Shown here: positions 2,117 through 50,214 of the stretch, in pieces
Layout of the letters: each line of letters starts with the position of its first letter
How positions within the stretch are numbered: position 1 is the first letter of the stretch
IMG/VR virus record: IMGVR_UViG_3300032770_000001
Span: 391,709-455,708 of that record
DNA length: 64,000 nt
Reading direction: 5' to 3' (one strand)
Program-made: the position numbers and the translations under genes
The notes under the pieces: model-generated
Seen by the model: only the letters and a program-made list of their open reading frames with translations
Told to the model about the DNA's origin: nothing
Databases searched by the model: none

Positions 2117-2767
2117 TTACTTAGTCTGTGCGATATCACGCCGCACTTGATCTTCTTCAGTCTTCCAGAGTTCACGCCACGCCATCAAGAAGTTGCTGAT
2201 GGTGTGGTCACTGACCTGAACCGAGTGCAGAGCACGTTTGTTCATTTCAATGATGTAGTGCATGAGCTTCGCGAATTTCACGCCTTCAAAGTTGATGTTG
2301 TCAACTTTGGCATCGTTCGCTTCGAGAAGCTGCTTACCTAACTCGCGTGCGCCCTTGAGTTGTTCCAAGGACGTTTTCATTCCCTCTTTGTCGTTAGAGC
2401 CGGATACCTTCAGTTCCTCAATGTAGCGGAGCAATGAAGCCATCTCCAGTGCAATCGTTTTGGAAATCTCTTCGTTGGTTGCGGACGGATCGGCAATCAA
2501 CTTCTCGATCTCCTGAATTTTCGACACACGTGTCGGCTTTTTCTTGTCTGCCTCGCTCTGACCTTCGACCGCAGCATCGGCAGCCTTTAGCAGCCCTGCG
2601 GCATCGACCTTCGCCGGGGCCGGGGTTTCCGGTGCTACCGGGAGGTTGCCTACCGCTGTGCTCGCTAAACGTTCAGCGACGGTTGTAGTTTCGGTTGCTG
2701 TTGATGTCACTTCTGCACCCTCTTCCTTAAAATCAACGCTCATACGTTGGGATGTTGACTCGTGCAT
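2117..2767 (-). CDS. Helical hypothetical protein (terminase small subunit is a weak possibility)
   Basis: 216 aa ORF coupled to the upstream gene by TAATG overlap; amphipathic helices. Function is a guess from size and context. Confidence 0.6.
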   Translation of the reverse strand: MHESTSQRMSVDFKEEGAEVTSTATETTTVAERLASTAVGNLPVAPETPAPAKVDAAGLLKAADAAVEGQSEADKKKPTRVSKIQEIEKLIADPSATNEEISKTIALEMASLLRYIEELKVSGSNDKEGMKTSLEQLKGARELGKQLLEANDAKVDNINFEGVKFAKLMHYIIEMNKRALHSVQVSDHTISNFLMAWRELWKTEEDQVRRDIAQTK

Positions 2768-4713
2768 TAAAAGTCTCCCAACTTCGATGAGTTCGGCATC
2801 TGCACATCGCCGAAATCACCGCTGTATTCGATGTCCGCCATCTTGGTGTCGCCCGGACGACCGCTGCTCGCAGTCAGTTCGAACTCAGCGAGAATTGAAC
2901 GTCCATCTTCCGGCACCGATCCGGTCTTGTGACCTTCAGATACCGTAGCGACCTTCTTGGTGCTGCCCTGCTTGTCCATACCGGGGAACGTTAACAACGT
3001 CCCACCAGTCAGACCGCAATGCATACCCTGACGGTACACGCATGTGCCGCACTTCGCAGCGCCCACAATCGGGTTGTGCACGGCGAGCTTGTTCTTGAGG
3101 AACGTGCAATCAATCTGCGACAACGCAACCTTGATCGGCTTATTCTTCAGGCTGGCAATGAAATCCTTCACTGCCTTGCTCGCCTTGGCAGACCCGACTT
3201 TGGCTGCCGCTGACTTGTAAATCTTCTCCAGTGAGTGACCCTTCTTGTGGTAGTGCTCGATCACGCTGGCATCGATTTCCGGACTTGCAGCCAGACGCTC
3301 ACGGCGCAACTGATCCGGGTTGGACTCGACGTAGTTCTGTGGAACGCGAGACAACGGGCTGGCTTTCATTGATTTCTCAAAGCCAGCAGTTTTCTCGATC
3401 TTCTTGCAGCACGCACATTTGGCAGCCCCAACCAGATTCATGGCGTGAACGCCACGCTCTTTCAGGAACTTCACATCGGCGGCAGCGAGAACAACCTGCC
3501 CGTTCACATTCGGACGCAGAGTCGCGACAAAACCAGACAACGCTTTGGCTGCCGGGTAGGTGCCGAACTTCTTCTCAGCGGCGGCTGTGATCGCTTTCAA
3601 GCTGTGACCCTTCTGGTGCAACTTCGCAACATGCGAAGAGTCCCACGAAAGCGGAGCCACGCGGTTAGCACGCTTCGCCTGCGCATCGACGTGACCGACG
3701 ACTGGAGCCGAAATGCCGGATGACGCCGTCTTCGGGCTCTTCGGCATAACCGGAGATTTGGTGCCATCGTTTCCATTGGCGATGTTCACCAAAGCAGCAC
3801 GCTTCATCTTTTCCGGCACACCCGCCGTCAGCTTGTTGACAATCGGAGTCAGTTCCTTGGTGTTTGCCACGATGGGAAGCTTGTACAGACCGCAAGTCTT
3901 CTGGGAACCGTTCTTCTGGAAGAACTGGCAACCCTGACATGCACTGATTTGCTTCACCGACGCCGCCTTCGGCTTAATGCCTGCGGCTTTCCACTGCTTT
4001 GCTTGGCGCAGGCAGTCGTTCGAATCCGAACCCTGCTTCTTGCGCTCATAGGTCGGCGAATTCTTGTCCATGTAAGTATTGGGCTCAAGATACGCCATAC
4101 CGAGCAGTCCCGCGTTGTCCTGCAAGTAGCGGGTGCCGATCTGGTGATTCATCAATTCCAATTCAGCCAGCTTGCGAGCGATCTTCGCCGGGGACACACC
4201 CTGATTGAGCAGATCGTGAATGTATTTCTTGACTTCGGCATCCGAGATGGCTTTCTTCTCGGCGCTGTTCTCAGCAAGATTGTTGTCCTTGCCAGCCTGT
4301 TCGAGACTCTGAGTCACTTCGGCGAACAGAGATTCGTCATCACCAAAACTGTTCTTGTAGTCCTGAGGGCTGCTGGCTTCGTGGTTGCGCCAGTTCTCAG
4401 CCGAGCCGCCGACGCCGGAGAATGCCTGATCCTTGTGCGCCATGCGATCAAGATGTGTCGAGCGGGCCTCAGCGAGGCGCTGCTTCTTCAAATCATTGAG
4501 GTTCGAGCTTTTGCCAGTCGGCCAGACCGGAGTGTGGCGGGAGGCGGACTCGGCGATGTCGTCCGTAAAATCCTCGTCCACGTACTGGTGCGTGCGGTCA
4601 AGCTGCTCTTCGCCAGATTCCTTAGCTTCGTCGAGACCGAGGTCCTTCCAAGCGGGTTCGCGATCTTCCAAAAGCTGGTCGATGAGCGGGGTGTACTTTT
4701 CTTTATCTGCCAT
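2767..4713 (-). CDS. K-x-A-containing putative head protein with internal helical+Cys repeats
   Basis: 648 aa, RBS AGGAG; repeats KGHSL...VGAAKCxxC; motifs KKAIS, KTAS, KTAG, KVAT. Confidence 0.8.
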   Translation of the reverse strand: MADKEKYTPLIDQLLEDREPAWKDLGLDEAKESGEEQLDRTHQYVDEDFTDDIAESASRHTPVWPTGKSSNLNDLKKQRLAEARSTHLDRMAHKDQAFSGVGGSAENWRNHEASSPQDYKNSFGDDESLFAEVTQSLEQAGKDNNLAENSAEKKAISDAEVKKYIHDLLNQGVSPAKIARKLAELELMNHQIGTRYLQDNAGLLGMAYLEPNTYMDKNSPTYERKKQGSDSNDCLRQAKQWKAAGIKPKAASVKQISACQGCQFFQKNGSQKTCGLYKLPIVANTKELTPIVNKLTAGVPEKMKRAALVNIANGNDGTKSPVMPKSPKTASSGISAPVVGHVDAQAKRANRVAPLSWDSSHVAKLHQKGHSLKAITAAAEKKFGTYPAAKALSGFVATLRPNVNGQVVLAAADVKFLKERGVHAMNLVGAAKCACCKKIEKTAGFEKSMKASPLSRVPQNYVESNPDQLRRERLAASPEIDASVIEHYHKKGHSLEKIYKSAAAKVGSAKASKAVKDFIASLKNKPIKVALSQIDCTFLKNKLAVHNPIVGAAKCGTCVYRQGMHCGLTGGTLLTFPGMDKQGSTKKVATVSEGHKTGSVPEDGRSILAEFELTASSGRPGDTKMADIEYSGDFGDVQMPNSSKLGDF

Positions 4714-19829: not shown

Positions 19830-20594
19830 CTAAAGACTCCCGGAGGCTGATTTCGCGCCTGCGGGGGTAACCTTTGCAGAAGATTTGTTCACTTCACTAA
19901 CACCCTCAGCACGCGGAATTTCGAGCTTACTCGGAGCCTTCGGTTGTCCGGCTGCGTCACGATCAGTGACGTATGCGTCGGAGCCAACGGCGGCTTCTTT
20001 TTCTTCAGGTTTCTCTTCCTTGTCTTCGGATTCGGACTTGTCCTCGGACTCGGATTTTTCTTCCTTCCCCTTCTCGAACGAGGGCTTTTCGTCAATCGGA
20101 GATTCCTGCGACTCTTCGCCCTTTTCCTCACCAAGCTCAAGCTCAGCCTTGCCTTCGTCAGTGAATGCTTGTTCGGCTGGGGTTGCGCCCAGATCGACAC
20201 CGAGAACCTCGGCTGCCATCTCGATAGCGGCTGCCTGCTCATCCAGTGCCTTGTAGGACTGACGGAGGGCGTCTGCCAGCATGTCCGGCTTTTCGTCGGC
20301 AGTCTGACGGAATCCCTTGGCGTAGTTACGGGCGGCGGCGACACGAACCTTTGCCGGAGCATCGGCGGCGGCACGGACGAGACCGAGATTGGTCTGGAGA
20401 CCTTCCATCCAGTCAGCCTGACGTGCGGACTTCTCTACCAGAGAAGCCAGAATCTTCTCAAATTTCTGCGGGTTCTTGGCAGCGGCACGCATCTTCTCGT
20501 ACTTCGCCGCCTCTTCCGCTTTACGGGCTTCCTTACGGGCTACGATAGCCTCACGGAGCGCCTTGCGGTCGATTGCTTTCTTTTCCTTTGCCAT
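19830..20594 (-). CDS. K-x-A-containing putative head/core protein
   Basis: 254 aa, GGAGG RBS, late promoter; RVAAA, KEAAV, KSAS; shares the TDRDxxGQPKAP module with 48685..50214. Confidence 0.85.
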   Translation of the reverse strand: MAKEKKAIDRKALREAIVARKEARKAEEAAKYEKMRAAAKNPQKFEKILASLVEKSARQADWMEGLQTNLGLVRAAADAPAKVRVAAARNYAKGFRQTADEKPDMLADALRQSYKALDEQAAAIEMAAEVLGVDLGATPAEQAFTDEGKAELELGEEKGEESQESPIDEKPSFEKGKEEKSESEDKSESEDKEEKPEEKEAAVGSDAYVTDRDAAGQPKAPSKLEIPRAEGVSEVNKSSAKVTPAGAKSASGSL

Positions 20595-20606
20595 GTTTCC
20601 TCCACC

Positions 20607-20627
20607 CTATTAAAGGGGTCAAAAAGT
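20607..20627 (-). promoter_or_regulatory. Putative late promoter (ACTTT-N13-TAG)
   Basis: Bipartite motif upstream of 20594. Confidence 0.55.
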
Positions 20628-20634
20628 TCAGTTG

Positions 20635-23600
20635 TTAGGCGACTTTCAGCCCGTCGCCCTGAATACCTGCAACAATATCTTGAATATAGCGGTGCTCGAC
20701 AACCACAGAGTCGCCCCAGTATGTTACCCCGCTTTCAGGGTTAGGCTCGCCGCTGCTGTAGCTTGAGTCGAGGTTTTCGATGATCCAGTCCTCAGCCGCC
20801 GCCGTCATTGGGGTCAACAGGAAGATGCCGCCCTCGTTGCGAACTTCAAAATCCGGCCCCTCGTAGGGAGCACCTTGTGGGGTGTACTGCGGCTTATCCG
20901 CCTTTTTCTTACGACCACGTGCGCCGGGGTGACCGCTTGACTTCTTGCTGCTGGTCAGCGGAAGTGCCTGCTGATTCGGATCGGGAGCAGGTGCTTCCGG
21001 TTGCTCTTCCTCGTACAGGTTGCCGCCGTACTGCATGAAAACCTCGTGCCCCTGCTTGAGTTCCTCGACCATATCTTCGATCTGGTAACGCTCGTGCCAG
21101 TACAGATTGCCGTTCGGATCAGCGAAGATTTCACCGGAGGTCAGAGCCCCGATGTCGGCGGGATTGACATTCTCCCAGCCGTTGGTGAAGAAGTCTTCCA
21201 TGAGTTCCCAGATGCTCTGGTACGTCTGCGCATCTTGCGGTCCACCCTGAGCAACTTCCTGAAGCAACTGTGCAGTCGGCTTCAGTTTGATGCCGCCCTT
21301 ACCGTAGAGGACATCGACGTAGGTGCCTTTGTCTTCGCCCTTGGTCGGCGTGCGTGCTTCCTGCGCATCCACTTTGTTCTGCTCGTCCTGCTGTTTCAAC
21401 TCATCAAGCGTCACAGCCGTTTTCTTTGATGCGACAGCGGAGTTCGGAACGTAACCGACTTCCGGCTGTTTTGGCTTCAGACCGAGTTGGTCTGGAGTCT
21501 TCGGATTGCCACGCTGCTTCATGTTGAGAATTGCTGGATTTGCCGCTTCCTTGTCAGATGCGATCACTTCACCTTCCTCGTCATCATCATCGAACGGGAC
21601 GTAGCCATCATAATCGGAACGCTCCGGATAGAATGCTGCCCATTCCGCCAATGCTTCAGCGTTGCCGCGACCGGATTCCTTGAAGCGAGCGATCATCTCG
21701 TTCAGATACTCATAGCCATGCGTGGTCAGCGGGTTCTTTAGGAACTCACCGCAGCCTGCGCAGTTCTGCGGACTGTCGGACTCTTGATCGAAGAACGGAC
21801 CTTTCGGATAGTTGTCGGAGTCATAGCTTGACTCGTCTTCCGGGTTCTCCGGGCCTTCGCCGTTCGCGTCGATTCTCTGCGCGATTTTTATAGCGCAGTC
21901 TTCGCACCACACGTCAGCGGCGTAGATGTATTCACCGTCGTTAGAACCACGGATACCACTGTCGGCACCGGGCTCGAATGCTTCTTTTTCCATTGTGCCC
22001 TCTTTCACTTGCTCGTTCTTAAATGTCACGAAACGGTGACGCCCACCGTGCAGAGAAGTTCCGCAGCAATCGCAAGGACGTTTCGAAAACTCATCGATGC
22101 CTTCGCCCGTCTCGCTGTCGAAGTCAGGAACCAGCCAACCCAATCTCTGGATGCCTGCCTGAATCTGCTCCATGCGCTTGTTAGCCTCTTCGCCCTGATA
22201 GTAATAATCAAGGCCGGAGTAGTCATCGTTCACTGCCGCTTGCAGACAGTCGTCGCACAACCACAAATTGTCCTGCTCAATTTCAGCGGCAGTTTTGTTT
22301 GCCTGAATGCCCATGTCTTTCAACATCTGCTTCTCTTCGTCCGTGGGGTTGTATTCCTTCTCGTGCCCGTGGAACTCTTCGATACCCGCAGGCTCTTCCA
22401 ATTCTACGTCACCGGGGGTGATGTAGTCCGCGAGGCTCTGCAACTCAGCCAGTTCCGCATAGCTAATGCGCTCGGCACGAAGTTGGCTACGGAGATATTC
22501 CAGACGCTCCTGAATTTCCTCTGGCTCCAACTCGTCCTCGTCCTCATCAATCCATGCCTTCTTGCTCGATGCTTCCTTGGAGCAAGTGCCGCAGTACCAC
22601 TTGTTGCCGATCTCGTGGCTGCCTTCGTCTACGTCAGATGAATCGAACACCTTACCGCAGCCAGCACATTCAACTTCGCGTGAAGAGGTCTTGTCGCTGC
22701 TTTCGACCGCATCCAGTCCCTCATCCACATGACGATCCATGCAGGATTCGTCGCCAGACTCAATCTCTTCGAGGTCGAGACCTTCGATGCTTTGCCCACC
22801 CTCGGCATCGACCACCGACCAAATCGCACCACACGGTCCGCACGTAACCCACCACTGTCCGTGCTCGAACGCAGGCACGCAACCTTCGTGAATCTCAGTG
22901 AGAGGGTGAGACGCGATTAGACGCTCTACTTCCATCTCCATTTCCGGAGTGTTCTGCTCCGTTTTCAACGCTGCTTTCTTCATGGTGCCCTCTTCTGACG
23001 ACATGTGGAATTTCTTGTTGGGAAGCTCCGGTGGGACGGTCTTCCGCTTCAGCCCTTCGTTTTCTTTCTCCTGTGGCAGCACAGCCATCGGTGCCCCCGG
23101 CTGTCCGGGGATCGGCTGCACTACCGGATTTGGTTCCGCTGTGGGTGCTTGCGGTTGCGCTGCTGGTGCCTGAACCGGAGCCGGAGCCGCCGCCACAGTC
23201 ATGGAAACAACCTTCTCACCCGGCTTGAGCTTCTTGGTAACGGCTTTCTCCGCTCCCTGATAATCGTTGCCGCCTACGGTTTCTTCACGCTGATTGCCTT
23301 TGGTGTCACGCAGGGTGACCTTCCACTTGGCTTCCTTCAACATCTTGATACCGTGATTGCGATTGACACTGTGCTCATTCGCGGTGTCTTCAGTCGTGCC
23401 CCATACCGGACAATTGCGGCACTGCCACATCTTCTCCGGAACGGTGACGCCCTTGAGAGCGTCCGGGTTGCGAGCTAACAACTTGTCCAAACGTCCAGCC
23501 GTCTTGCTTGCACCCTTCATTTTCTTATAAGCTTCGAATTTCTGATCCTGCGGTACACCCGGCATGTGTTCTCCACCACCACGACAAGGGCGTAAATTGC

Positions 23601-25683
23601 AGGTTACACATTCCAGACAACGAGGGCAATACAGATGCGTGCGCTCTTGCTCATCATAGTCCGGTTCCTCAGGCATGTCGGCAGGCAAGAGGTTCTCCGC
23701 AAATTCTGCGGTCTTTGACGCTTGCTTGAGCTTCGAATAACGTTCCCGCATCTGTGCTAATGTCTTTTCGTCGAAACGGATGATGTCGGCATTGCGCTTC
23801 AGACCCTCTTCAGAGCCAAATCCGCCAGTCACCAACTTCTCCTCATCGTTCACGAAATGGTAGGAACCGTCGTTGAGCTTCTCAACTTTCCACTTGGGGT
23901 CATCGAGTTTGATGCCAACGGTCTTCGGCCCGGCGGGTTTCTTGCCGCCATGAATGTATTGCTCGTAATAAGCATCGTGCTCTTCAGCACTGATTTTGCC
24001 AGCATAGCGCAATGCGTCAATCACGCCAGCGATGTAGTTGTAGGCGTTTGAATTCTTTGCTGAGTCATCCCAGATTTTCGTCAGGAAGGTGCCGACATCC
24101 AAACCACGGAGGCTATCCTTCAACTCGGCGACTTTAACTGCTCCGGCATGATAACTGCCTTGCGTGCGTCCATGCGGTGGACGCCCGGTGTCGCCTTCAG
24201 TGATCTGTGGCTGAATGCCATCATAGAATTGATCGCCGCCCTCAGCGCCGTCTTTCTTCTTAGGTTCGGTCTTCTTCATCAACTCCACGGTTTTGTCGAA
24301 GTTTTCGCTGTAGACCGGGCAATCGATGCGGTGCCGTCCATGATAGCCGCCGCAGCACTTTGAAGTGTCAATCGTCGGAACCGAAGTATCGGCAGCTTCT
24401 TTGCAAATGCAATTTTCCTTCACCCGGTCACACGCATCACAGTACGGCACACCAGCAGGCGGGTGAATATCCCGCTCAGTCTGAACCGCAGCCGCTTTCG
24501 GATCATTGATGCCGGGGACGATACCGTGTTCCCAATTCTTGCCACAGTCATTGCACTTGGCAGTCTCGAAGTCGGTCGGCATGAGCCCGTAGTCTGAGGA
24601 GCCGCAGTGTGGGCACTTCGGTTTAGCCGATGCCGTGGCGTGTACTTTCGCCTGCGGTTCTTTCATCTGAGTGATGAGATTGATAAGTTGGTATCCAGTC
24701 TCTTCGCCACGAGGCAACTGTCCTTCGGTCGCAAACTCTTCAAGTAGACCGGGCAGTTCCGAGTAGTAACGCTTCAATGAGTCCTGACCGAGGTTGGTGA
24801 CTTTCAGCCAGTCCTGTACCAGATCGCTCACCGTAATCTTGGCTTCCCCAGTGCTCTCCTGTGCGTGCTTCCAGAACAGTAAGAGAACGATCATGTTGTA
24901 CTTGGCAGCCGTGCGGGATACCTTGGTTGGGAGCCATGCGGCGAATCGCTTCGCTACGTTCTTGAATTCCTGCTCGGATTCAAACTCAGTGTGCGGCGAT
25001 GGAGCATTCAACTGCTGACTGTCGATCAAACTATAAGTTTCGTCCTCCTCGTGCTTGCCGCCAGCAGGCTGCTCGCCGGAGACTTCCTCCGGATGCTGCA
25101 CCTGACGGATATAGCTCTTGGCACGCTCGATGCGGAAGGTAAACTGCTTCTTCAGGAATTCCGTAATCTGTTCGGCCACTGGGAGCTTCTTGACGCCAGC
25201 GGGAAAGTTCTTGATGGCTCGCGGAAAGTCCTGCATCGCCTTGCCGTGCTGGAGCACGTAAAGGATGACGTGATAGATCGCCTCATCCTTCAGTTCGAAG
25301 TCGAGGGTTGTGGATGTGAGTGAGGGAACGAAGACTGTCTGAAACCACTTCGACCAATCCATCTTGGGATCGACCGGATATCCCGCCTGCTCAATGTAGG
25401 ACTTGACGAACTTGTCGAAATCCTTGTTGTAGGCGAAGACGTAGCGGATTCGTGACGCAATACGCGCCTGACCCGGTGAGATCGGGTGGAAATTGGCTGG
25501 GGTCTGAACAGGCTTCCCGGTGTACGGGTCGGCCAACCTGAAGGCGTAGCCGTCCGGTCCGGCGACTTTAGACACCACCCGGTAGGCGGAACCATCGAGA
25601 GTATCGACAATTTGCCCCGGCGCGATAAGGCGGGAAAACTTGGTCAGGTTCGCCGCTGGTACTCGTACAGCGTCCTGAGGCAT
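20635..25683 (-). CDS. 1682-aa modular polyprotein: sigma-like N-terminal domain plus more than 15 K-x-A-delimited modules
   Basis: Linkers KAAA, KEAA, KVA, KQASKTA, KGASKTA, KEA, KKAA, KEASSKKA, KTAA, KKTA, KKKA separate Zn-finger and acidic modules. Confidence 0.9.
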   Translation of the reverse strand: MPQDAVRVPAANLTKFSRLIAPGQIVDTLDGSAYRVVSKVAGPDGYAFRLADPYTGKPVQTPANFHPISPGQARIASRIRYVFAYNKDFDKFVKSYIEQAGYPVDPKMDWSKWFQTVFVPSLTSTTLDFELKDEAIYHVILYVLQHGKAMQDFPRAIKNFPAGVKKLPVAEQITEFLKKQFTFRIERAKSYIRQVQHPEEVSGEQPAGGKHEEDETYSLIDSQQLNAPSPHTEFESEQEFKNVAKRFAAWLPTKVSRTAAKYNMIVLLLFWKHAQESTGEAKITVSDLVQDWLKVTNLGQDSLKRYYSELPGLLEEFATEGQLPRGEETGYQLINLITQMKEPQAKVHATASAKPKCPHCGSSDYGLMPTDFETAKCNDCGKNWEHGIVPGINDPKAAAVQTERDIHPPAGVPYCDACDRVKENCICKEAADTSVPTIDTSKCCGGYHGRHRIDCPVYSENFDKTVELMKKTEPKKKDGAEGGDQFYDGIQPQITEGDTGRPPHGRTQGSYHAGAVKVAELKDSLRGLDVGTFLTKIWDDSAKNSNAYNYIAGVIDALRYAGKISAEEHDAYYEQYIHGGKKPAGPKTVGIKLDDPKWKVEKLNDGSYHFVNDEEKLVTGGFGSEEGLKRNADIIRFDEKTLAQMRERYSKLKQASKTAEFAENLLPADMPEEPDYDEQERTHLYCPRCLECVTCNLRPCRGGGEHMPGVPQDQKFEAYKKMKGASKTAGRLDKLLARNPDALKGVTVPEKMWQCRNCPVWGTTEDTANEHSVNRNHGIKMLKEAKWKVTLRDTKGNQREETVGGNDYQGAEKAVTKKLKPGEKVVSMTVAAAPAPVQAPAAQPQAPTAEPNPVVQPIPGQPGAPMAVLPQEKENEGLKRKTVPPELPNKKFHMSSEEGTMKKAALKTEQNTPEMEMEVERLIASHPLTEIHEGCVPAFEHGQWWVTCGPCGAIWSVVDAEGGQSIEGLDLEEIESGDESCMDRHVDEGLDAVESSDKTSSREVECAGCGKVFDSSDVDEGSHEIGNKWYCGTCSKEASSKKAWIDEDEDELEPEEIQERLEYLRSQLRAERISYAELAELQSLADYITPGDVELEEPAGIEEFHGHEKEYNPTDEEKQMLKDMGIQANKTAAEIEQDNLWLCDDCLQAAVNDDYSGLDYYYQGEEANKRMEQIQAGIQRLGWLVPDFDSETGEGIDEFSKRPCDCCGTSLHGGRHRFVTFKNEQVKEGTMEKEAFEPGADSGIRGSNDGEYIYAADVWCEDCAIKIAQRIDANGEGPENPEDESSYDSDNYPKGPFFDQESDSPQNCAGCGEFLKNPLTTHGYEYLNEMIARFKESGRGNAEALAEWAAFYPERSDYDGYVPFDDDDEEGEVIASDKEAANPAILNMKQRGNPKTPDQLGLKPKQPEVGYVPNSAVASKKTAVTLDELKQQDEQNKVDAQEARTPTKGEDKGTYVDVLYGKGGIKLKPTAQLLQEVAQGGPQDAQTYQSIWELMEDFFTNGWENVNPADIGALTSGEIFADPNGNLYWHERYQIEDMVEELKQGHEVFMQYGGNLYEEEQPEAPAPDPNQQALPLTSSKKSSGHPGARGRKKKADKPQYTPQGAPYEGPDFEVRNEGGIFLLTPMTAAAEDWIIENLDSSYSSGEPNPESGVTYWGDSVVVEHRYIQDIVAGIQGDGLKVA

Positions 25684-25695
25684 GTTCTTCCGTCC

Positions 25696-25926
25696 TTAGT
25701 CGATGTGGATGTCGTTCGGGTCGCCTTCGGTCTTCTCGTCTTCCTTCATGATCTGCTCAAGGGTCTTGAGGTACTCTTCGTGATCCTCAAAAGCCTGCGG
25801 GTCATGCGGAGCGCCCTTTTCGTCCTTGATCGTGGACTGAGCTTTCTTCAGTCCAAGGCGGTCAAGCTCGCCTGCGTACAGGCGGTTCATTGCGGATGAC
25901 TCTGCTGCTGCGAATTTCTTTGCCAT
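25696..25926 (-). CDS. Small putative head protein
   Basis: 76 aa, AGGAG RBS; KKFAAA, KKAQ. Confidence 0.75.
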   Translation of the reverse strand: MAKKFAAAESSAMNRLYAGELDRLGLKKAQSTIKDEKGAPHDPQAFEDHEEYLKTLEQIMKEDEKTEGDPNDIHID

Positions 25927-38895: not shown

Positions 38896-39855
38896 TTAGT
38901 TCTCGCCGTAGTTGGCGGTCGAGTTGAAGCGACCATTGACCGTAAGACGCTGCACGCCGGACGGGTTGAACACGAGGAAGCCGAGGTTCTCGAAGATCGA
39001 GAAGCCGATCTGACGGAGGTCAGGACGGTCGGCGCTCATGACCGTGAGCGGAATACGCTCTGGGATAACGCCGAGGAACTCTGCGTCCGCCAGAATGTAG
39101 ATCGAGCCGTAGCCGACCTTACGCGACTGGAGGAGCGTTGCGCCCCAGAGATAGCCCATCACGCCCGTTTTCAACAGCTTGCGCTGTGTTTCGCGGTCGA
39201 TGTTCTGTTGGGTCCACTTCAACAGGTCCGTGTAGTCACGGGGGTTGAAGAAGACGAACGCGACTGAGAGGTCATGACGCTGCACCTGACCAAAGCCGTC
39301 TGCCATCGAGTTGATGTCAATCGGAGCGTTGATCGGAATGTCAGGGTTGTAGACCGGATCATTCGAGTTCTTACCCGCTGCGCTGTTCGCGACACCGTCA
39401 AACAGAACGAACACGTATCCGTCTTCGGCTGCGCCCACTTCGGCTTTCGCCAAGTTCAGTGAACGAGCAACCAAGTCGAAACGGCGCTCTTTGATCTGCG
39501 TGATCGGGATCATCGGATTGGACACGATTTCGAACGTCGGAACCGTGACGCGCTTCGGTTTTGTAACGCGGACGATGTCACCACCTTCTTCGCCGACGAT
39601 GAATGCTTCGACGAAGGACGAACCCGGAGTCGAGCCAACGGTCATCGCGTTGACATCGAATTCCTTGTCGTAGATGGGCAGTGCGCCATCCGGAAGAGTT
39701 TCGACCATGAGAGCCTTGCGAGCAATGCTCATATAGTCACGGCGACGACGCAGGGACGGACCGAGCGAAGCCGCAAGCTTCTGACGCCCACCCGCCGTCT
39801 TCAAAAGTTGGCCGAGCATTTGCGTCTGCTGTTGTGTGCGAGAAAGTTGTGCCAT
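38896..39855 (-). CDS. Major capsid protein (HK97 fold)
   Basis: 319 aa; gene order protease-scaffold-decoration-MCP-terminator; DYMSIARKALMVETLPDGALPIYDKE, VPTFEIVSNP, GFSIFENLGFLVFNP; GAGGAG RBS. Confidence 0.9.
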   Translation of the reverse strand: MAQLSRTQQQTQMLGQLLKTAGGRQKLAASLGPSLRRRRDYMSIARKALMVETLPDGALPIYDKEFDVNAMTVGSTPGSSFVEAFIVGEEGGDIVRVTKPKRVTVPTFEIVSNPMIPITQIKERRFDLVARSLNLAKAEVGAAEDGYVFVLFDGVANSAAGKNSNDPVYNPDIPINAPIDINSMADGFGQVQRHDLSVAFVFFNPRDYTDLLKWTQQNIDRETQRKLLKTGVMGYLWGATLLQSRKVGYGSIYILADAEFLGVIPERIPLTVMSADRPDLRQIGFSIFENLGFLVFNPSGVQRLTVNGRFNSTANYGEN

Positions 39856-41752: not shown

Positions 41753-44008
41753 TTAGAACTCTTCGCTGCCGAACAGCGCGGTTGCAATGTCCACAGGCTT
41801 CGGCGAAGCGACGACCGGGCGAACACGCTTAATGCTGCCCTTCTTCTCGTCCTTCTTCTCTGATGCCGCCTTTGCTGACTGTTTCGGAGCCTGCAATTCC
41901 GGACGTGCATCTTGAGGAGTGCGCTTTGCGCCCTGCTCTTCAGGCTTGATGTCCTTCATTGCTTCCGCGAACAAGTCCTCATCGTGATCGGTGTCGTTGT
42001 CGCGTGCTTCCGAACCGTCCTGCTTGAAGTGGTTCGCCGCGTCAACAAACGCCTCGACCACGTCTTCGCCTTCAACGCTGGTTGCCGTTTTGTTGTCAAC
42101 CGACGCCATCAGGCTGGCAAGCGGATCATTTTCCGAGCCCTGAACTGTGAAGTAGTCCTCGATTGAAGCGACTTGCATACCGCTGTCTTCGAGTGCTGCT
42201 TCCATCTGTGCCGCCGAGGTCGGTGCGAAAAAGTCTTCCGCAGCCATGTGCTCGACGCTACCGTCGCCTTCGTTTGCAAGAGCCGAAACTTTATCGTCCA
42301 TTGCACCCTCATCAAATACGGACGAAAGGTCAAGCTCGCCCTCTGCCGGGCCTTCAGTCTCTTCGAGCGAAATTTCTTCCTCGCCTTCCAACGGAAGAGC
42401 AGGCTCTTCCTCGGACTCTTCGAGAATTTCCTGTTCGAGTGCCTTGATCGCTTCCTCGGCTTCCTCGATCTTTTCCTGCACGACCATCTTCTTCTCGTCG
42501 GTCAGGATTGCACCAGCGGCTTCCTCAGGCGGTGCGCCTGCATCGCCAGCCGGAGCTTCTGCCAACGGATCGCCCGGTGCTTCAGGAGCAGGCGGTGCGT
42601 CTGGAGCCGGAGCATCGACCGGAGCTTCCGCTGCCGGATCGTCTGCGACTTTCTGATCTGCGCCCTTTACTGGAGGAGCAGGGAGATCGGCCTTCTTTTC
42701 GGCAGCAGCTTTCTTCTCTGCGGCAGCCTTGCACTCAGGGCAATCACCAGCACACTTGCCGTCCTTGCCATGAGCAGTCTTCGCGGCAGCCTTCTTGCTG
42801 TCGCCTTCGGAGAGGTTCACGGTCTGACCCGGCTTCTCACCAGCGTCCGGACGCTCGGCGGCTTTACCCGCTTCGAGTTCCTTCGGCTCAGTGTGCTCAC
42901 CGCCGCCGCAACCGCGACCATCGTTGTACGTGCCTGTCTGTGGACCTGCATCCTTGCGGTCGTCGGCAGTCTTCGCGGCTGCTTCTTTCGCAGAACCATG
43001 AAGTTCCTTTTCGACGGCGGCACGCTCAGACTTGAGCACGGACGGGTCTTCAAGATACTGATTGAGTTCGGTCTTGTGGACTTCTTTGAACTGTTCAGCA
43101 AGGTGGGTGGAGTGAGCGTTCTTTGCGGTCTGACGGAGGGCGGCGACGAGAGTCTTCGTGTCATTGCCATCCAGCAGCGATGTCGCGAATGCTTGACGAC
43201 GCTCGACGGAGGCTGTCGGCAACATCGTGTTAGCGATGGTATACGCCGCAGCCGTGCGAATCTGTGCTTCTTTCTTGATAGACTCGCGCTGTTTCTTTGC
43301 CTCAGCGAGCTTCTCTTTCAGATTCGCGGGCTTGGTAGCAGTCTGATTTGCCATGGTAGAGCCTTCCTTTTTCATGTCAGAACGGGCAGAAACGCCCTTC
43401 TTTAGAGGTACTTGATAGTTATTTTTCTTGCTAATTGGAGCTTTTGCACTAGCAAGGGGTGCTTCCAGAGGGGCTGCTTCCGCAGCCGCATCATCTGTGG
43501 GAAGTGGTTCTGCCGCCCCAGCCGCGCCGTCAACCGGGGGCTCAGGGGTAGCTGCCGGAACAGCAGCTTCAGGGGCAGGAGGGGGTTCCGGTGCCGGGGG
43601 TGCTGCCGGAGCGGAAATGCCAAGATCGGGTGCCGGGGGTGCCAGCGGTGCTGCCGGAGCAGCCAAGGGATCGATAGCGGGTTCACCGCCAGATGCGTCG
43701 GCGATCTGCGAATCCAGACCATCCAAAACGGACTTGATCTCTTCCGACCACGGTCCGCCCTTGAACTTTTCCCACTCACCAATCAATTGCACGCCTTCGC
43801 GCATGTGACGAATTTCTTCTTCGAGTTCTTCGCGCTTCTGGGAGAGGAGGTCGAATTCCGGCGATGGGCCGAGATCAGTGGGTGCGTCGGGAGCCATCTC
43901 AGGCATACCCATAAGCTGGTCGTCCATGCCGTCCAGCAGGGCTTGTTTACGAGCGATTTCCGCCGCTACGTGTGATTTGATCTGTGCAACTGTCTTCGGT
44001 TTTGCCAT
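41753..44008 (-). CDS. Prohead scaffold/core protein
   Basis: 751 aa, acidic, Pro/Ala-rich, coiled coils; many K-x-A motifs (KEAAAKTA, KKAAAKTA, KKAAAEKKA, KVA, KTAT); lies between protease and MCP. Confidence 0.8.
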   Translation of the reverse strand: MAKPKTVAQIKSHVAAEIARKQALLDGMDDQLMGMPEMAPDAPTDLGPSPEFDLLSQKREELEEEIRHMREGVQLIGEWEKFKGGPWSEEIKSVLDGLDSQIADASGGEPAIDPLAAPAAPLAPPAPDLGISAPAAPPAPEPPPAPEAAVPAATPEPPVDGAAGAAEPLPTDDAAAEAAPLEAPLASAKAPISKKNNYQVPLKKGVSARSDMKKEGSTMANQTATKPANLKEKLAEAKKQRESIKKEAQIRTAAAYTIANTMLPTASVERRQAFATSLLDGNDTKTLVAALRQTAKNAHSTHLAEQFKEVHKTELNQYLEDPSVLKSERAAVEKELHGSAKEAAAKTADDRKDAGPQTGTYNDGRGCGGGEHTEPKELEAGKAAERPDAGEKPGQTVNLSEGDSKKAAAKTAHGKDGKCAGDCPECKAAAEKKAAAEKKADLPAPPVKGADQKVADDPAAEAPVDAPAPDAPPAPEAPGDPLAEAPAGDAGAPPEEAAGAILTDEKKMVVQEKIEEAEEAIKALEQEILEESEEEPALPLEGEEEISLEETEGPAEGELDLSSVFDEGAMDDKVSALANEGDGSVEHMAAEDFFAPTSAAQMEAALEDSGMQVASIEDYFTVQGSENDPLASLMASVDNKTATSVEGEDVVEAFVDAANHFKQDGSEARDNDTDHDEDLFAEAMKDIKPEEQGAKRTPQDARPELQAPKQSAKAASEKKDEKKGSIKRVRPVVASPKPVDIATALFGSEEF

Positions 44009-44904
44009 TAGCGTATTAGCCTCCCGCGTAAATCGGCGTTGAGTAAAGCTTCCCCCAAATCAAGGGTCTCGAAATCATTATTTTTACTGGCAATTTTTGT
44101 AAGCTTTGCGATCTTGCCAGCCCCAGCCGCTTTGGTGTATGGAGATTTGGGACCGATCCATACCTCGCCGCCCTCGATAATGTTGCGTTTCGAGGCTCCG
44201 GGGAACGCTGGGGTCGCAACCCAAGAAGCTTCCACGAACTTCACACCGCCGTTCGGCAACGTCTTGTGACCGCAGAGTTCAGCGATGCGACGGGCGATGC
44301 CGTCTTCGTCCGGAAGGAAAGTGCCCTTCTGGTACGACAGATGATTGCAATAGGTGCTTTGATCGGTGACATGGGTGCCGCAATAAGAGCAGATCACCAG
44401 ATCGGTGACGCAACCCATCGACAGATAGCGAACTTCCTCGTTCTTGATGTCCTCAATCAGTTTCTCGTGTCCGAGATCGGTAGCGACGAGGATATCGACG
44501 AAGTACACCCAAACTTCGTTGCCGACAACGTGCACCTTACGAAGCTGGGAATCCAGAATGTGCCCTTTGGCGTACTTGCTGTTCTGGTAGTGCTCAACGA
44601 AGTTGAAGGCACCAGTGAAACTCTTGTGCGAAAGCTTTATGACCTCGTTCGTCCATGCGTCATCGTTGTTGTTGACAAGATGCGCAGTCTCCGGCTTGAT
44701 GAGGTAGTCGTAAGGATCGTGCTCAGTCATCACGCTCGCCATGATGGTGCAATGCGAAAGCATGTACCGGGAATTGTCGGCGGCGATTTTGATTTCCGAC
44801 GCTTGCTTGTGACCGAAGGCACGATTGCCATACATCAACTGCCAGTCGTTGGCAGAGACAATGGGGTCTTCGATAAGCGCGTTGGCAAACTTCTTGAAAG
44901 GCAT
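44008..44904 (-). CDS. Prohead maturation protease (assemblin/HK97-type Ser protease with Zn-finger insert)
   Basis: NNNDD, FVEH (His), LSMGC (Ser), CSYCG...CNHL, FVEASWVATPAFPGA. Confidence 0.85.
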   Translation of the reverse strand: MPFKKFANALIEDPIVSANDWQLMYGNRAFGHKQASEIKIAADNSRYMLSHCTIMASVMTEHDPYDYLIKPETAHLVNNNDDAWTNEVIKLSHKSFTGAFNFVEHYQNSKYAKGHILDSQLRKVHVVGNEVWVYFVDILVATDLGHEKLIEDIKNEEVRYLSMGCVTDLVICSYCGTHVTDQSTYCNHLSYQKGTFLPDEDGIARRIAELCGHKTLPNGGVKFVEASWVATPAFPGASKRNIIEGGEVWIGPKSPYTKAAGAGKIAKLTKIASKNNDFETLDLGEALLNADLRGRLIR

Positions 44905-44909
44905 AGGTC

Positions 44910-44932
44910 TTCTATTAAAATAGGGCTAAAGT
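44910..44932 (-). promoter_or_regulatory. Putative late promoter (ACTTT-N13-TAGAA)
   Basis: Upstream of the protease gene. Confidence 0.55.
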
Positions 44933-47778: not shown

Positions 47779-47799
47779 CCTATTAAAGGATTGAAAAGC
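47778..47799 (-). promoter_or_regulatory. Putative late promoter (GCTTT-N12-TAG) abutting the ATG
   Basis: gcttttcaatcctttaatagg-ATG. Confidence 0.55.
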
Positions 47800-48684: not shown

Positions 48685-50214
48685 TTACTCAGCGGCGGCT
48701 ACCAGCTTGAGACCACCGAACACCGAGGACTGCTTTCCTTTGCTGCCCTTGGCATCCTTGATCTTCTCGGCTTCTGCCGCCGACTCTTCCTGAATCTCCT
48801 GCTTGTTGAGGACTTTCACGGCCTCATCAAACATGTCGCCTGCGCGGAAAATGGCTTCAACCGCTTCACGCACCGGACGCGAACTGTTGGTCTGAACCAA
48901 CGGCTTTGCATCCAAATACATGCGCTTCAGCGTTTCGCCTAGCCTTTCCGCCTCCTTCACAGCCTTGCTCGTGCTCATCTCGGCTGCTAATTTGATAGGC
49001 GCTGTCGTTTCTGGACGCTTGATCCCGGTGTTGTCGTCACGCTCTGAGTGCGCTTTCGCGATCTCAGGGACGCGACTTCCACCGTCTGTCACATCCATCG
49101 TGTCTTGATCCTGAACGAACCAAGCACCACCGTTGCCACTCGCAATCTTGCGTGCGATTATGGCAGCCGCGTACTTCGCACCTGCATCAAATGCAGCTTC
49201 GATCTGCTGTGAAGATTCCTTCTTGTTGTGAATTGACCATGCCGTTGCATAGGCTTTGTCTTTTTCGCCGGGGTACTCATCCTTCAGCTTGTGCATGAGG
49301 GATTCGCTGATTCCCGGAGGCGTAACGGCAACCTTTGCCGAGGCGTCCTTCTCATCCTCGAAACCGACGAGGGCGAGACCGCCAAAACGCTTCAGGTCGA
49401 AGATCGGTGACGCGGCCTTGGACGAAGCAGCTTTCGGCGCTTCAGGTGCCACAGGCTCAACGGGGCGATTCTTCAAAATTTCCGCGAGGCGTTCAACCGC
49501 AGCTTGCACGGACTTGTTGGCTTCGAAGCCCTCCAGACCCGTAAGGTCTTTCACTAGCTGAGCGATGAACTCGCTCGGCAGCGACTCGAACAGCGTGTCG
49601 AGAGACCCATCACCAACCGGGCCGCCCGGTGCCGGAGCAGCGGGAGCGGGGGCTGGAGCCGGAGGCGGCACAGGAGCGGCAGCCGCAGGAGCAGGAGGAA
49701 TCGGGGCGGCACCAGCAGCCGGGTCTTCCGCTTCCTTCTTTTTCTTGCGTGCAGCTTCTTTATCAGCAGCCAAACGAGGAACATCAGCCTTTTCAGGAGC
49801 TTTCGGCTGACCCTTCTCGTCACGGTCGGTCACGAAGGCGGAATCCGCTGAACCAGCGGCATCCTTCTTCGACGCCATTGATGGCTTTCCGACTGGAGCA
49901 GTTTGAGTTACCTTTGCGGGGCGTTGTTCCCCACGCCAATTTGCAATCATGTCAACCTCTTGTTTTACTTTCTGTGCGATCTCCGGCGAGTACGAATCGT
50001 CGAGATAGCTGTCAGAGTTTGGTGCTGCTGAAACTTCTTTCAGGTAATCAATCGATGATGCCAACTGATCGACCTTTGGATCATCCAGCCCTTCCTGCAT
50101 CCACTGATTCAGAAGCGATTCACCAATCGAAATCGCATCACGTACAGTTTCAGGTGACGTGAGGATCGTGCTTTTCTTCGTTGCCGCTGCGCGGCGTTCC
50201 ATCAGTTTGCTCAT
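48685..50214 (-). CDS. K-x-A-punctuated putative head/core protein
   Basis: 509 aa; KDAA, KEAA, KEA, KAASSKAAS, KDASAKVA, KIAS, KLAA; KAYATAWSI motif. Confidence 0.8.
   Translation of the reverse strand: MSKLMERRAAATKKSTILTSPETVRDAISIGESLLNQWMQEGLDDPKVDQLASSIDYLKEVSAAPNSDSYLDDSYSPEIAQKVKQEVDMIANWRGEQRPAKVTQTAPVGKPSMASKKDAAGSADSAFVTDRDEKGQPKAPEKADVPRLAADKEAARKKKKEAEDPAAGAAPIPPAPAAAAPVPPPAPAPAPAAPAPGGPVGDGSLDTLFESLPSEFIAQLVKDLTGLEGFEANKSVQAAVERLAEILKNRPVEPVAPEAPKAASSKAASPIFDLKRFGGLALVGFEDEKDASAKVAVTPPGISESLMHKLKDEYPGEKDKAYATAWSIHNKKESSQQIEAAFDAGAKYAAAIIARKIASGNGGAWFVQDQDTMDVTDGGSRVPEIAKAHSERDDNTGIKRPETTAPIKLAAEMSTSKAVKEAERLGETLKRMYLDAKPLVQTNSSRPVREAVEAIFRAGDMFDEAVKVLNKQEIQEESAAEAEKIKDAKGSKGKQSSVFGGLKLVAAAE

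What the first reader, a model, noticed from the sequence alone, without database searches (positions are those of the whole stretch)
20635..25683. Candidate system: virion-packaged cargo polyproteins cut at K-x-A sites into many effectors
Seen: this 1682-aa ORF is a string of roughly 25-140 aa self-contained modules (Zn fingers, very acidic domains), each preceded by K-x-A(A/S): KAAA, KEAA, KVA, KQASKTA, KGASKTA, KEA, KKAA, KEASSKKA, KTAA, KKTA, KKKA. The same punctuation occurs in 1..2105, 2767..4713, 19830..20594, 44932..47778, 48685..50214 and the scaffold, but is only sporadic in the sheath, tube and fibre. These genes lie in operons headed by the late-promoter motif. Known: T4 gp21 and phiKZ gp175 prohead proteases cleave internal head proteins at short motifs (after Glu), and those proteins are ejected into the host. 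Inference: K-x-A is this phage's protease site, and the polyproteins are an extensible cassette for delivering many small host-takeover or anti-defence proteins together with the DNA.
Basis: partly seen in the sequence, partly recalled or inferred. Interest (0 to 1): 0.92.

Follow-up and report, generated by a model that had tools for sequence, protein, structure and literature searches.

The report
Megaphage polyprotein punctuated by K-x-A sites
A 1682-residue late gene of a soil megaphage strings together small proteins that other phages encode as separate genes, joined by a short Lys-x-Ala motif that is probably the head-maturation protease's cutting site, so it looks like a true phage polyprotein, though no cleavage or delivery has been shown.

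Summary
The ORF 20635-25683(-) has 22 K-x-A against about 10.6 expected. Across the head-cluster ORFs K-x-A is the top gapped dipeptide after CxxC (95 vs 51-57), while other Lys-rich ORFs sit at expectation (26 vs 26.3). The refined motif is [K>R/L/M]-[T>>K,Q,V,I,L,E]-A|[S/A].

Three independent results lift it above composition:
- In 34 unrelated long multi-module relatives, K-x-A is 330 vs 185 and KTA 73 vs 9.7. In about 100 free-standing homologues of the same modules it is 38 vs 38.
- The start Met of 18 and 70 free-standing homologues maps onto, or 13 residues after, K-x-A junctions.
- The prohead protease family, including phage G, keeps invariant K-x-A at residues 5-7, K-T-A-S at 33-36 and A-S in a variable C-tail, where such proteases cut themselves.

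The best reading is a polyvalent-type head protein cut in trans by the prohead protease at an Ala-type site, unlike the Glu-type sites of T4 and phiKZ. Virion location, cleavage and any effector role are inferred, not shown. It is a new variant of a known kind, and is testable in Tunturi_5, phage G and Bxz1-like phages.

The parts
20635..25683 (-). 1682-aa modular ORF (polyprotein candidate); ends ...GLKVA-stop
24649..25683 (-). Conserved N-terminal domain, aa 1-345. It is the only part shared by the whole family: P0001-P0007, P0128 and Tunturi_5 gp345.
24490..24636 (-). Zn-ribbon module aa 350-398 (KPKCPHCG...WEHG...DPKAA|). It is embedded at 75-89% identity in many otherwise different proteins, usually flanked by [K/R/L]-x-A-A and DPK-x-A.
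22969..23328 (-). aa 786-905: 'WKVTLRD' beta-alpha module (AF2 pLDDT 77-91) beginning right after KEA|, then a Pro/Ala-rich stretch and the conserved TVPPELPNxKFHM motif
22570..22968 (-). aa 906-1038: acidic Cys-rich module. The free-standing homologue P0138 starts at the position equivalent to aa 905, just after KKA.
21979..22287 (-). Module A, aa 1133-1235 (pLDDT 94-97 for 1133-1222). In 18 free-standing 85-184-aa homologues the Met maps to aa 1131-1137 (mode 1133, the P1' of KTA 1130-32). Their C-termini map to 1221-1230, before KEA 1233-35.
21544..21978 (-). Module B, aa 1236-1380. In 70 free-standing homologues the start maps to aa 1245-1251 (mode 1249, in 46; 63 begin with Met), and their ends map to 1355-1379, before KEA 1378-80. 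Erythrobacter phage XM05_117 is an annotated stand-alone copy.
20899..21414 (-). aa 1424-1595: acidic module. aa 1489-1567 is shared with Tunturi_5 gp328. It also has shorter homologues (P0165 140 aa, P0142 243 aa, P0136 575 aa), with the match starting at their residues 4-17.
20638..20898 (-). aa 1596-1682: last acidic module, after KKKA|, ending in KVA
44008..44904 (-). Prohead (head-maturation) protease, 298 aa, with invariant S162-M-G, H51 and H105 and a Zn-ribbon-like insert. K.A is 7 vs 2.0.
44086..44097 (-). Protease C-tail K-I-A-S (aa 270-273). A272-S273 are invariant in a variable tail across 32 (A2) and 26 (A1, incl. Tunturi_5 and phage G) sequences; predicted self-cleavage site.
41753..44008 (-). 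Scaffold-like Ala/Lys-rich 751-aa protein directly after the protease; K.A 21 vs 11.5
38896..39855 (-). Major capsid protein, 319 aa
39793..39801 (-). K-T-A at capsid protein aa 19-21. Homology to distant capsid proteins begins at aa 21-23; candidate propeptide cut.
44932..47778 (-). 948-aa ORF just upstream of the protease; K.A 13 vs 4.6. Its positional orthologue in a sister phage is 2301 aa and carries ART-PolyVal.
48685..50214 (-). 509-aa ORF, homologue of Tunturi_5 gp328 ('DNA ejection protein' by annotation); K.A 12 vs 8.3 (weak)
19830..20594 (-). 254-aa gene after the ORF, homologous to the C-terminal part of Tunturi_5 gp345 (fission/fusion partner); K.A not enriched (5 vs 6.0)
25696..25926 (-). 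76-aa gene before the ORF, conserved with Tunturi_5 gp344 and with a 75-aa gene at the same position in L009; 3 K.A vs 1.0
2767..4713 (-). 648-aa ORF with K.A 15 vs 7.8
1..2105 (-). N-terminal 701 aa of an ORF running off the window, with KTA/KKA around a small Zn knuckle; K.A 9 vs 5.1

Best explanation
The window comes from a 456-kb soil megaphage of the clade that includes Tunturiibacter phage Tunturi_5 and, more distantly, Bacillus phage G.

The ORF belongs to a family of late, structural-module proteins. Each has a conserved N-terminal domain of about 345 aa followed by a freely shuffled string of small modules: Zn ribbons, acidic domains and a small beta-alpha domain. Many of these modules exist elsewhere as free-standing small phage genes.

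The modules are joined by a short linear motif, [K>R/L/M]-x-A followed by S/A. I infer that this motif is the recognition site of the phage's own prohead protease (44008-44904). On that reading the protein is loaded into the prohead and cut in trans into roughly 15 pieces, as the scaffold-like protein, the protease's own termini and probably the capsid protein's 21-residue N-terminus are cut.

Shown: the motif, its specificity to concatenated proteins, its position at module boundaries, and its invariance in the protease's own termini.

Inferred: that the protease cuts there, that the ORF is inside the head, and that the pieces stay in the capsid and enter the host with the DNA.
For: Enrichment and specificity:
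- ORF 22 vs 10.6. The pooled set is 95 vs 51-57 and robust to local shuffles. Other Lys-rich ORFs give 26 vs 26.3.
- Logo: KTA is 34 vs 6.4 (z 11), G/P/N are depleted at P2, and S/A are enriched at P1'.
- Independent replicate: in 34 long relatives found by module homology, K.A is 330 vs 185 (z 12.5) and KTA 73 vs 9.7 (z 21). Short free-standing homologues give 38 vs 38.0.

Junction position:
- Starts of free-standing homologues map to aa 1133 (18 proteins), 1249 (70) and 905 (1), with their ends just before the next K-x-A.
- Embedded copies of module B in other long proteins carry K-x-A 10-15 aa upstream in 7 of 10 cases.
- In the AF2 model only 1 of 18 sites falls in a block with pLDDT >=70, against 29% expected (p 0.017).

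Protease link:
- The protease matches phrog_18299 (E 2e-15).
- It keeps invariant K5-x-A7, near-invariant K33-T-A-S and invariant A272-S273 in a variable tail, also in Tunturi_5 and phage G.
- Scaffold-like partners are enriched in Tunturi_5 gp332 (16 vs 5.6), L005 (26 vs 13), phage G gp19 and gp21 (8 vs 2.4 and 7 vs 2.7), and the Rizal gp94 protease-scaffold fusion (19 vs 8.1).
- Capsid proteins carry KTA/KSA at aa 19-21.

Cargo idea:
- Gene fission and fusion occur at a K-x-A junction.
- The neighbouring family carries ART-PolyVal in a sister phage, with KTA 17 aa before the domain.
- Free-standing homologues sit in arrays of small non-structural genes.
Against: - There are no proteomic or biochemical data for any member. 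'Virion structural protein' for Tunturi_5 gp345 is only an annotation, and the isolation paper reports no mass spectrometry.
- The N-terminal domain has no known homologue.
- The capsid protein's N-terminus is uniformly conserved in 119 homologues, so its KTA is uninformative there. Phage G's capsid protein has no K-x-A at all.
- Enrichment varies among family members: P0002 has 10 vs 10.4.
- Some K-x-A lie inside domains (aa 1266, 582).
- Distance of sites to AF2 confidence edges is not significant as a median (p 0.36), and 60% of the model is low confidence.
- The protease fold class could not be established.
- No module has a demonstrated function.
Confidence: 0.55

Rival explanations
1. 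The K-x-A sites are protease sites, but these proteins are assembly material (scaffold or inner-body-like core). They are chopped up so that the pieces leave, or merely fill, the head. The modules would then have no role in the host.
For: The strongest enrichments are in the scaffold-like proteins next to the protease. T4 and phiKZ-type scaffolds are degraded this way (established knowledge; PMC10052503). No module has a known effector function.
Against: Modules A and B and others are homologous to free-standing small genes in non-structural small-gene arrays of other phages. Module content is shuffled and expanded, which is typical of conflict genes. A sister phage's neighbouring family member carries an ART-PolyVal enzyme domain. 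Folded Zn domains of 9-17 kDa are unlikely to escape through capsid pores (inference).
Confidence: 0.2
2. K-x-A is a linker or docking motif that is not cleaved. The ORF then acts as one giant multidomain (classical polyvalent or tail/neck-associated) protein, and the motif serves flexibility, DNA binding or binding of another factor.
For: The ORF lies at the end of the tail-fibre part of the late module. Some polyvalent proteins, such as the N4 vRNAP, are packaged unprocessed (PMC5512222). There is no direct cleavage evidence.
Against: The motif's invariance at both variable ends of the protease itself is what autoprocessing predicts and is hard to explain as a linker. It is absent from tail proteins. 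It occurs as doubled sites (KQA-SKTA, KGA-SKTA, KEA-SSKKA). The P2/P1' preferences and the depletion of G/P at P2 fit an extended-strand protease substrate rather than a flexible linker.
Confidence: 0.2
3. The pattern is a by-product of Lys/Ala-rich composition, or of relic MK-x-A N-termini from fused genes.
For: Some stretches are Lys/Ala low-complexity (scaffold aa 405-455). Four junctions have Met one or two residues before the K-x-A (MKGA, MKKAA, MEKEA, MLKEA). A.K and K..A are mildly enriched too.
Against: The enrichment survives 15-30-aa local shuffles and is far stronger than reversed or shifted controls. Free-standing homologues do not start with MK-x-A and show no enrichment (38 vs 38). 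KTA is at z 11-21.
Confidence: 0.03

Closest known systems
Polyvalent proteins of phages and conjugative elements (Iyer, Burroughs, Anand, de Souza, Aravind 2017; PMC5512222)
   Same: These are very large phage proteins that concatenate many independent domains, with extensive domain shuffling, and are proposed to be packaged in the head and delivered with the DNA. A sister phage's neighbouring family member carries the diagnostic ART-PolyVal domain.
   Different: This ORF has none of the catalogued effector domains; its modules are tiny Zn-ribbon or acidic domains of unknown function. Processing there is attributed to embedded MPTase or other peptidase domains. Here a conserved junction motif points to trans-cleavage by the capsid maturation protease at many sites.
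Prohead-protease substrates of T4 (gp21: IPI-III, Alt, gp22) and phiKZ/SPN3US (gp175/gp245: inner-body and ejection proteins)
   Same: A short tripeptide motif is shared by capsid protein, scaffold, the protease itself and internal or ejected head proteins, with multiple motif copies in propeptide regions (PMC10052503).
   Different: Those enzymes cut after Glu (L/I-x-E and A/S/G-x-E) and mostly remove one N-terminal propeptide. Here P1 is Ala with Lys at P3, and the sites lie between about 15 self-contained modules, so this would be a true polyprotein. No experimental support exists yet.
Herpesvirus assemblin and its (V/L/I)-x-A|S maturation and release sites; UL26-type protease-scaffold fusion (own knowledge; homology of phage prohead proteases to herpesvirus protease is cited in PMC5694885)
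   Same: Both have Ala at P1, Ser at P1' and a long side chain at P3, with self-cleavage sites flanking the protease. The relative Rizal gp94 is a protease-scaffold fusion.
   Different: Membership of the assemblin/T4 gp21 fold could not be tested (no Pfam or PDB hit, poor model). The substrates here include multi-module cargo proteins.
Polyproteins of RNA viruses (picorna-, poty-, nidoviruses)
   Same: One ORF encodes many mature products separated by a short conserved protease motif. New modules can be added by insertion between sites.
   Different: Those are unrelated proteases, and their processing is cytoplasmic and used for gene expression. Here processing would be inside a capsid and would deliver pre-made proteins.

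Membership tests
Polyvalent proteins (Iyer et al. 2017) | Many (2-15) independent domains in one polypeptide of a phage or conjugative element, with shuffled architectures | tested here: met
   At least five modules have separate homologues, free-standing or embedded elsewhere. Architectures differ among P0001-P0007 and P0128.
Polyvalent proteins (Iyer et al. 2017) | Contains catalogued conflict or effector domains (ART-PolyVal, MPTase, PBECR, ParB, lysozyme and others) | tested here: not met
   The ORF and P0128 have no Pfam, NCBIfam or functional PHROG hit. Only the orthologue of the neighbouring ORF 44932-47778 in L005 has PF18760 (E 1e-18).
Polyvalent proteins (Iyer et al. 2017) | Packaged in the capsid and delivered with the DNA | not testable with these tools
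   The only evidence is position in the late structural module and an annotation label.
Prohead-protease substrates (T4 gp21 / phiKZ gp175 type) | The phage encodes a prohead protease in the head gene cluster | tested here: met
   phrog_18299 'head maturation protease', E 2e-15. The gene sits between the 948-aa ORF and the scaffold-like ORF, 4 kb from the capsid gene. More than 800 homologues were found.
Prohead-protease substrates (T4 gp21 / phiKZ gp175 type) | One short motif shared by the protease's own termini, the scaffold, the capsid protein N-terminus and internal proteins | tested here: met
   This is shown at sequence level only, and the capsid site is uninformative.
Prohead-protease substrates (T4 gp21 / phiKZ gp175 type) | Cleavage C-terminal to Glu (L/I-x-E or A/S/G-x-E) | tested here: not met
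   The enriched motif has Ala at P1. E.A is not specially enriched (z 3.0 vs 12.5 for K.A).
Prohead-protease substrates (T4 gp21 / phiKZ gp175 type) | Demonstrated cleavage and presence in virions | not testable with these tools
   No mass spectrometry is reported for Tunturi_5. The phage G JMB 2020 paper is not held.
Assemblin / T4 gp21-like serine protease fold | Ser-His-His/Glu catalytic residues on the assemblin fold | tested here: inconclusive
   S162, H51, H105, H188, H213 and E225 are invariant. However, AF2 pLDDT is 52, Foldseek found nothing, and there is no PDB or Pfam sequence hit.

The most novel reading that the evidence does not exclude
A large clade of soil megaphages, whose protease family reaches phage G and Bxz1-like mycobacteriophages, uses its capsid maturation protease as a polyprotein-processing enzyme. 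Small proteins that other phages express as early genes are concatenated behind a head-targeting domain and separated by [K/R/L/M]-x-A|S/A sites. They would be cut inside the prohead and injected ready-made with the DNA. This would be an extensible, recombination-friendly cassette for pre-made host-takeover or anti-defence factors, including an ADP-ribosyltransferase in a sister phage.
Probability: 0.3. Interest if true: 0.85.

Novelty: new variant of a known kind. Interest (0 to 1): 0.68.

Why it matters
If K-x-A is the cleavage code, three things follow.
- It gives a third specificity class for phage prohead proteases: Ala at P1, like herpesvirus assemblin, instead of Glu.
- It allows the mature virion proteome of hundreds of uncultured megaphages to be predicted from sequence.
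- It shows that phages can use a eukaryotic-virus-style polyprotein to deliver many small proteins at the moment of infection, before any transcription.

The junction rule also marks out dozens of small domains as candidate injected factors worth screening for anti-defence activity. Three cultured systems exist for testing: Tunturi_5 on Tunturiibacter, phage G, and Bxz1-like phages on M. smegmatis mc2 155.

Tried and rejected
Searches that found nothing useful:
- Megablast of the ORF against phage records found nothing.
- Pfam, NCBIfam and PHROG searches of the ORF, its N-terminal domain and its neighbours found no functional family.
- tblastn of the N-terminal domain at E<=1 found only Tunturi_5.
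- PDB sequence and profile searches with the protease found nothing.
- A viral-contig scan found only the source contig.

Structure attempts:
- The AF2 model of the protease was poor (pLDDT 52), and Foldseek on it was meaningless.
- Foldseek with the ORF model gave only weak, non-significant p56-like and tiny-phage-protein matches.

Tests that were not informative:
- The capsid protein family alignment was meant as a test of the KTA site, but the N-terminus is uniformly conserved.
- The median distance of sites to AF2 confidence edges is not significant (p 0.36).

Explanations considered and rejected:
- A DNA-level repeat: codons vary.
- Relic MK-x-A N-termini: free-standing homologues do not have them.
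- Helical heptad or composition bias: refuted by local shuffles and by reversed and shifted controls.

Not resolved:
- The late-promoter claim could not be checked. CCTTTAATAGG occurs only twice.
Full report
WHAT THE WINDOW IS
The window is part of IMGVR_UViG_3300032770_000001, a 455.7-kb viral contig. Nearly all genes from about 14 kb onward lie on the minus strand and include a late structural module:
- sheath, 50704-54642 (phrog_2839);
- prohead protease, 44008-44904 (phrog_18299, E 2e-15);
- major capsid protein, 38896-39855 (phrog_2522);
- tail and fibre proteins.

The nearest cultured relative is Tunturiibacter phage Tunturi_5, a 309-kb jumbo myophage of Acidobacteriota (capsid protein 70% identical). 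Next come an uncultured 485-kb phage (LR745208) and Bacillus phage G (PMC11924767). Gene order is shared with Tunturi_5. The protease has more than 800 metagenomic homologues at 60% identity or more, on contigs up to 894 kb.

- K.A occurs 22 times against 10.6 expected from composition (0 of 500 shuffles reach 22). Against 20-residue local shuffles the expectation is 11.5.
K.A is the top signal after C..C (the Zn-finger signature): 95 vs 51-57, z 7.6, 6.5 and 5.8 under global, 30-aa and 15-aa local shuffling.
- All other ORFs of the window with at least 5% Lys give 26 vs 26.3. Sheath and fibre are at expectation.
- Two of the named ORFs are not convincingly enriched: 19830-20594 (5 vs 6.0) and 48685-50214 (12 vs 8.3).
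- The codons used at the sites vary freely (AAA/AAG, all four GCN), so this is a protein-level signal.

REFINED MOTIF
From 220 sites in this ORF family and the head-cluster proteins of the window and Tunturi_5:
- P2 strongly prefers Thr (KTA 34 vs 6.4, z 11), then K, Q, V, I, L and E.
- G, P and N are depleted at P2.
- P1' prefers S or A, and P4-P6 prefer S or A.
- In related proteins P3 can be M, L or R.

INDEPENDENT REPLICATION
An exhaustive HMMER search with ORF residues 346-1545 found 3700 proteins. None of them was selected for the motif.
- The 34 listed hits of 400 aa or more (the closest homologue, P0128, set aside) have K.A 330 vs 185 expected (z 12.5) and KTA 73 vs 9.7 (z 21).
- The roughly 100 hits of 200 aa or less have K.A 38 vs 38.0 and KTA 3 vs 1.6.
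- Reversed and shifted controls are far weaker (A.K z 3.5, KA z 2.1, K..A z 5.7).

The same domains therefore lack the motif when they are separate genes and acquire it when they are concatenated.

THE MOTIF SITS AT MODULE BOUNDARIES
- Module A (aa 1133-1235): 18 free-standing proteins of 85-184 aa, all starting with Met, align so that their first residue falls at ORF positions 1131-1137. The mode is 1133, exactly the residue after K-T-A 1130-1132. Their C-termini fall at 1221-1230, just before K-E-A 1233-1235.
- Module B (aa 1236-1380): 70 free-standing proteins (63 beginning with Met) start at ORF positions 1245-1251 (1249 in 46 of them), about 13 residues after the K-E-A cut position. They end at 1355-1379, before K-E-A 1378-1380. 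Erythrobacter phage XM05 gene 117 is an annotated stand-alone example in an array of small genes.
- One free-standing homologue of the aa 906-1038 module starts at position 905, after K-K-A.
- In other long proteins, embedded copies of module B are preceded by K-x-A in 7 of 10 cases (KFAmeKAA|ynpg..., gsteKKA|fepd...). Zn-ribbon copies are flanked by [K/R/L]-x-A-A-(A)-K-P and followed by DPK-x-A.
- An AlphaFold2 model of aa 483-1682 is confident only for some modules (mean pLDDT 52). Only 1 of 18 sites lies in a 10-residue block with pLDDT of 70 or more, against 29% of blocks (binomial p 0.017). Nine sites lie within 7 residues of a confident/unconfident transition. The median-distance test is not significant (p 0.36).
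- A few K-x-A (aa 39, 272, 582, 1266) are inside domains and are probably not junctions.

ARCHITECTURE OF THE FAMILY
- Seven metagenomic proteins (994-1390 aa), P0128 (1915 aa) and Tunturi_5 gp345 (667 aa) share the N-terminal domain of about 200-345 aa.
- The metagenomic relatives also share two short conserved motifs, GDTGRxPH and TVPPE(L/I)PNxK(Y/F)HM. Everything else is shuffled, duplicated or unique.
- ORF residues 935-1682 have no counterpart in P0001-P0007 or gp345 (P0128 does cover most of aa 896-1565). This part is made of acidic modules (net charge -11 to -26).
- The family keeps a fixed place at the end of the structural module, after the fibre genes and a conserved 75-77-aa gene.
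- The ORF ends in K-V-A-stop. The next gene (19830-20594) is homologous to the C-terminal part of Tunturi_5 gp345, where it is preceded by KYA/KHA. A gene boundary here therefore equals a junction there.
- ORF aa 1489-1567 is shared with Tunturi_5 gp328, a different head-cluster protein.

LINK TO THE PROHEAD PROTEASE (INFERENCE, BUT WELL GROUNDED)
In an alignment of 26 proteases that includes Tunturi_5 and phage G, the N- and C-terminal tails are variable. They nevertheless contain K5-x-A7 (invariant), K33-T-A-S (about 90%), a further K-x-A|A-D, and, in the C-tail, x-A272-S273 (invariant, with K, M or L at P3). Prohead proteases of the T4 and phiKZ types, and herpesvirus assemblin, trim themselves at their own recognition motif (PMC10052503 and my own knowledge), so this is the expected signature.

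The scaffold-like protein after the protease is enriched in each lineage examined:
- this window, 21 vs 11.5;
- Tunturi_5 gp332, 16 vs 5.6;
- sister contig L005, 26 vs 13;
- phage G gp21, 7 vs 2.7, and its protease gp19, 8 vs 2.4;
- the protease-scaffold fusion gp94 of mycobacteriophage Rizal, 19 vs 8.1.

The capsid protein has K-T-A (K-S-A in Tunturi_5) at residues 19-21, where homology to distant capsid proteins begins. That N-terminus is uniformly conserved in 119 close homologues, and phage G's capsid protein lacks the motif, so this point is only compatible with the hypothesis, not evidence for it.

WHAT THE CARGO MIGHT BE
No module matches a family of known function.
- Free-standing homologues sit in co-directional arrays of small unannotated genes, next to sigma-factor and GerE-like genes. 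This is typical of non-structural phage regions.
- A domain of about 50 aa in the model resembles tiny free-standing phage proteins, including the phi29-family uracil-DNA-glycosylase inhibitor p56. The E-values are not significant (0.04-0.4).
- The ORF just upstream of the protease (44932-47778, K.A 13 vs 4.6) belongs to a second frame-plus-insert family. Its positional orthologue in a sister phage (capsid protein 94% identical) is 2301 aa and carries PF18760 ART-PolyVal (E 1e-18) 17 residues after a K-T-A. This recalls T4 Alt, a head-packaged, gp21-processed ADP-ribosyltransferase (PMC5512222).

COMPARISON WITH WHAT IS KNOWN
The general idea of many domains in one phage protein, delivered with the DNA, is the polyvalent-protein concept (PMC5512222). 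Processing of internal head proteins by the prohead protease at a tripeptide motif is established for T4 and for phiKZ/SPN3US. Three things differ here:
- The motif has Ala at P1 and Lys at P3, resembling herpesvirus assemblin's (V/L/I)-x-A|S rather than x-x-E.
- The sites separate about 15 self-contained modules instead of removing one propeptide.
- The modules are interchangeable with free-standing genes.

I therefore rate it a new variant of a known kind.

LIMITS
- Nothing here shows cleavage, virion location or ejection.
- The protease's fold class is untested: the AF2 model was poor, and there were no PDB or Pfam hits.
The only recurrent upstream string I saw, CCTTTAATAGG, occurs twice.
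- My confidence is about 0.55 that the ORF is a prohead-protease-processed head polyprotein, and about 0.3 that its pieces are injected effectors.

Noticed in passing
window 44008-44904 (-), aa 162-188: The prohead protease has an invariant Cys/His cluster (C165, C172, C175, C186, H188) immediately after the invariant S162-M-G. This is a Zn-ribbon-like insert next to the presumed catalytic Ser. A subclade adds 'RGCQxDGDHPFC' before the KTA|S site.
   Followed up: partly
window 27307-31893, 50704-54642 and other tail genes: Tail, fibre and sheath proteins are extremely Lys-poor (1.2-1.6% K), while the head-internal candidates have 7-12% K.
   Followed up: no
L011 (Mycobacterium phage Rizal) 2989-7101: gp94 (1370 aa), annotated 'tape measure', carries the prohead-protease homology at its N-terminus and is K-x-A enriched (19 vs 8.1). 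It looks like a protease-scaffold fusion, as in herpesvirus UL26, so the annotation is probably wrong.
   Followed up: partly
window ORF aa ~497-505 and ~885-897 (about 24169-24195 and 22993-23031): Two short motifs are conserved across the otherwise shuffled family: GDTGR(L/P)PH, and TVPPE(L/I)PNxK(Y/F)HM after a Pro/Ala-rich stretch. Their function is unknown; they could be docking or targeting signals.
   Followed up: no
window 20594-20637 and L001 38567-40570: The ORF ends ...KVA-stop. The next gene (19830-20594) corresponds to the C-terminal part of Tunturi_5 gp345, so gene fission or fusion has occurred exactly at a K-x-A junction.
   Followed up: partly
L005 3060-9965: The positional orthologue of window ORF 44932-47778 is 2301 aa and contains PF18760 ART-PolyVal (aa 374-551, E 1e-18), inserted between segments shared with the window protein.
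   Followed up: partly
window 20606-20616 and 47779-47789 (-): CCTTTAATAGG occurs only twice in the window, both times just upstream of a start codon (genes 19830-20594 and 44932-47778). Expected by chance 0.26; 3 of 100 shuffles reach 2.
   Followed up: partly
window 9310-9807 (+): A 165-aa ORF on the plus strand matches residues 192-250 of the Tunturi_5 major capsid protein (35% over 62 aa, E 3.5e-11). It is a capsid-fragment-like ORF far from the real capsid gene.
   Followed up: no
ORF model mfae50f419177 (probably aa 786-832): A beta-beta-alpha-beta domain of about 50 aa resembles many 50-70-aa uncharacterised phage proteins and the phi29-family UDG inhibitor p56 (Foldseek probability 0.84-1.0 but E 0.04-0.4). 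The aligned region is not reported by the tool.
   Followed up: partly
L005, L009, L010: HNH, GIY-YIG, NUMOD3 and Endonuclease_7 genes and a Hint/intein-containing 769-aa gene are scattered through the structural modules of relatives.
   Followed up: no
L002 (phage G) 3985-5931: The phage G portal gp14 has K-Q-A|A at aa 18-20, K-M-A|S at 55-57 and K-I-A|S at 625-627 (5 K.A vs 2.2). These are candidate terminal trimming sites that could be checked in existing proteomic data.
   Followed up: no
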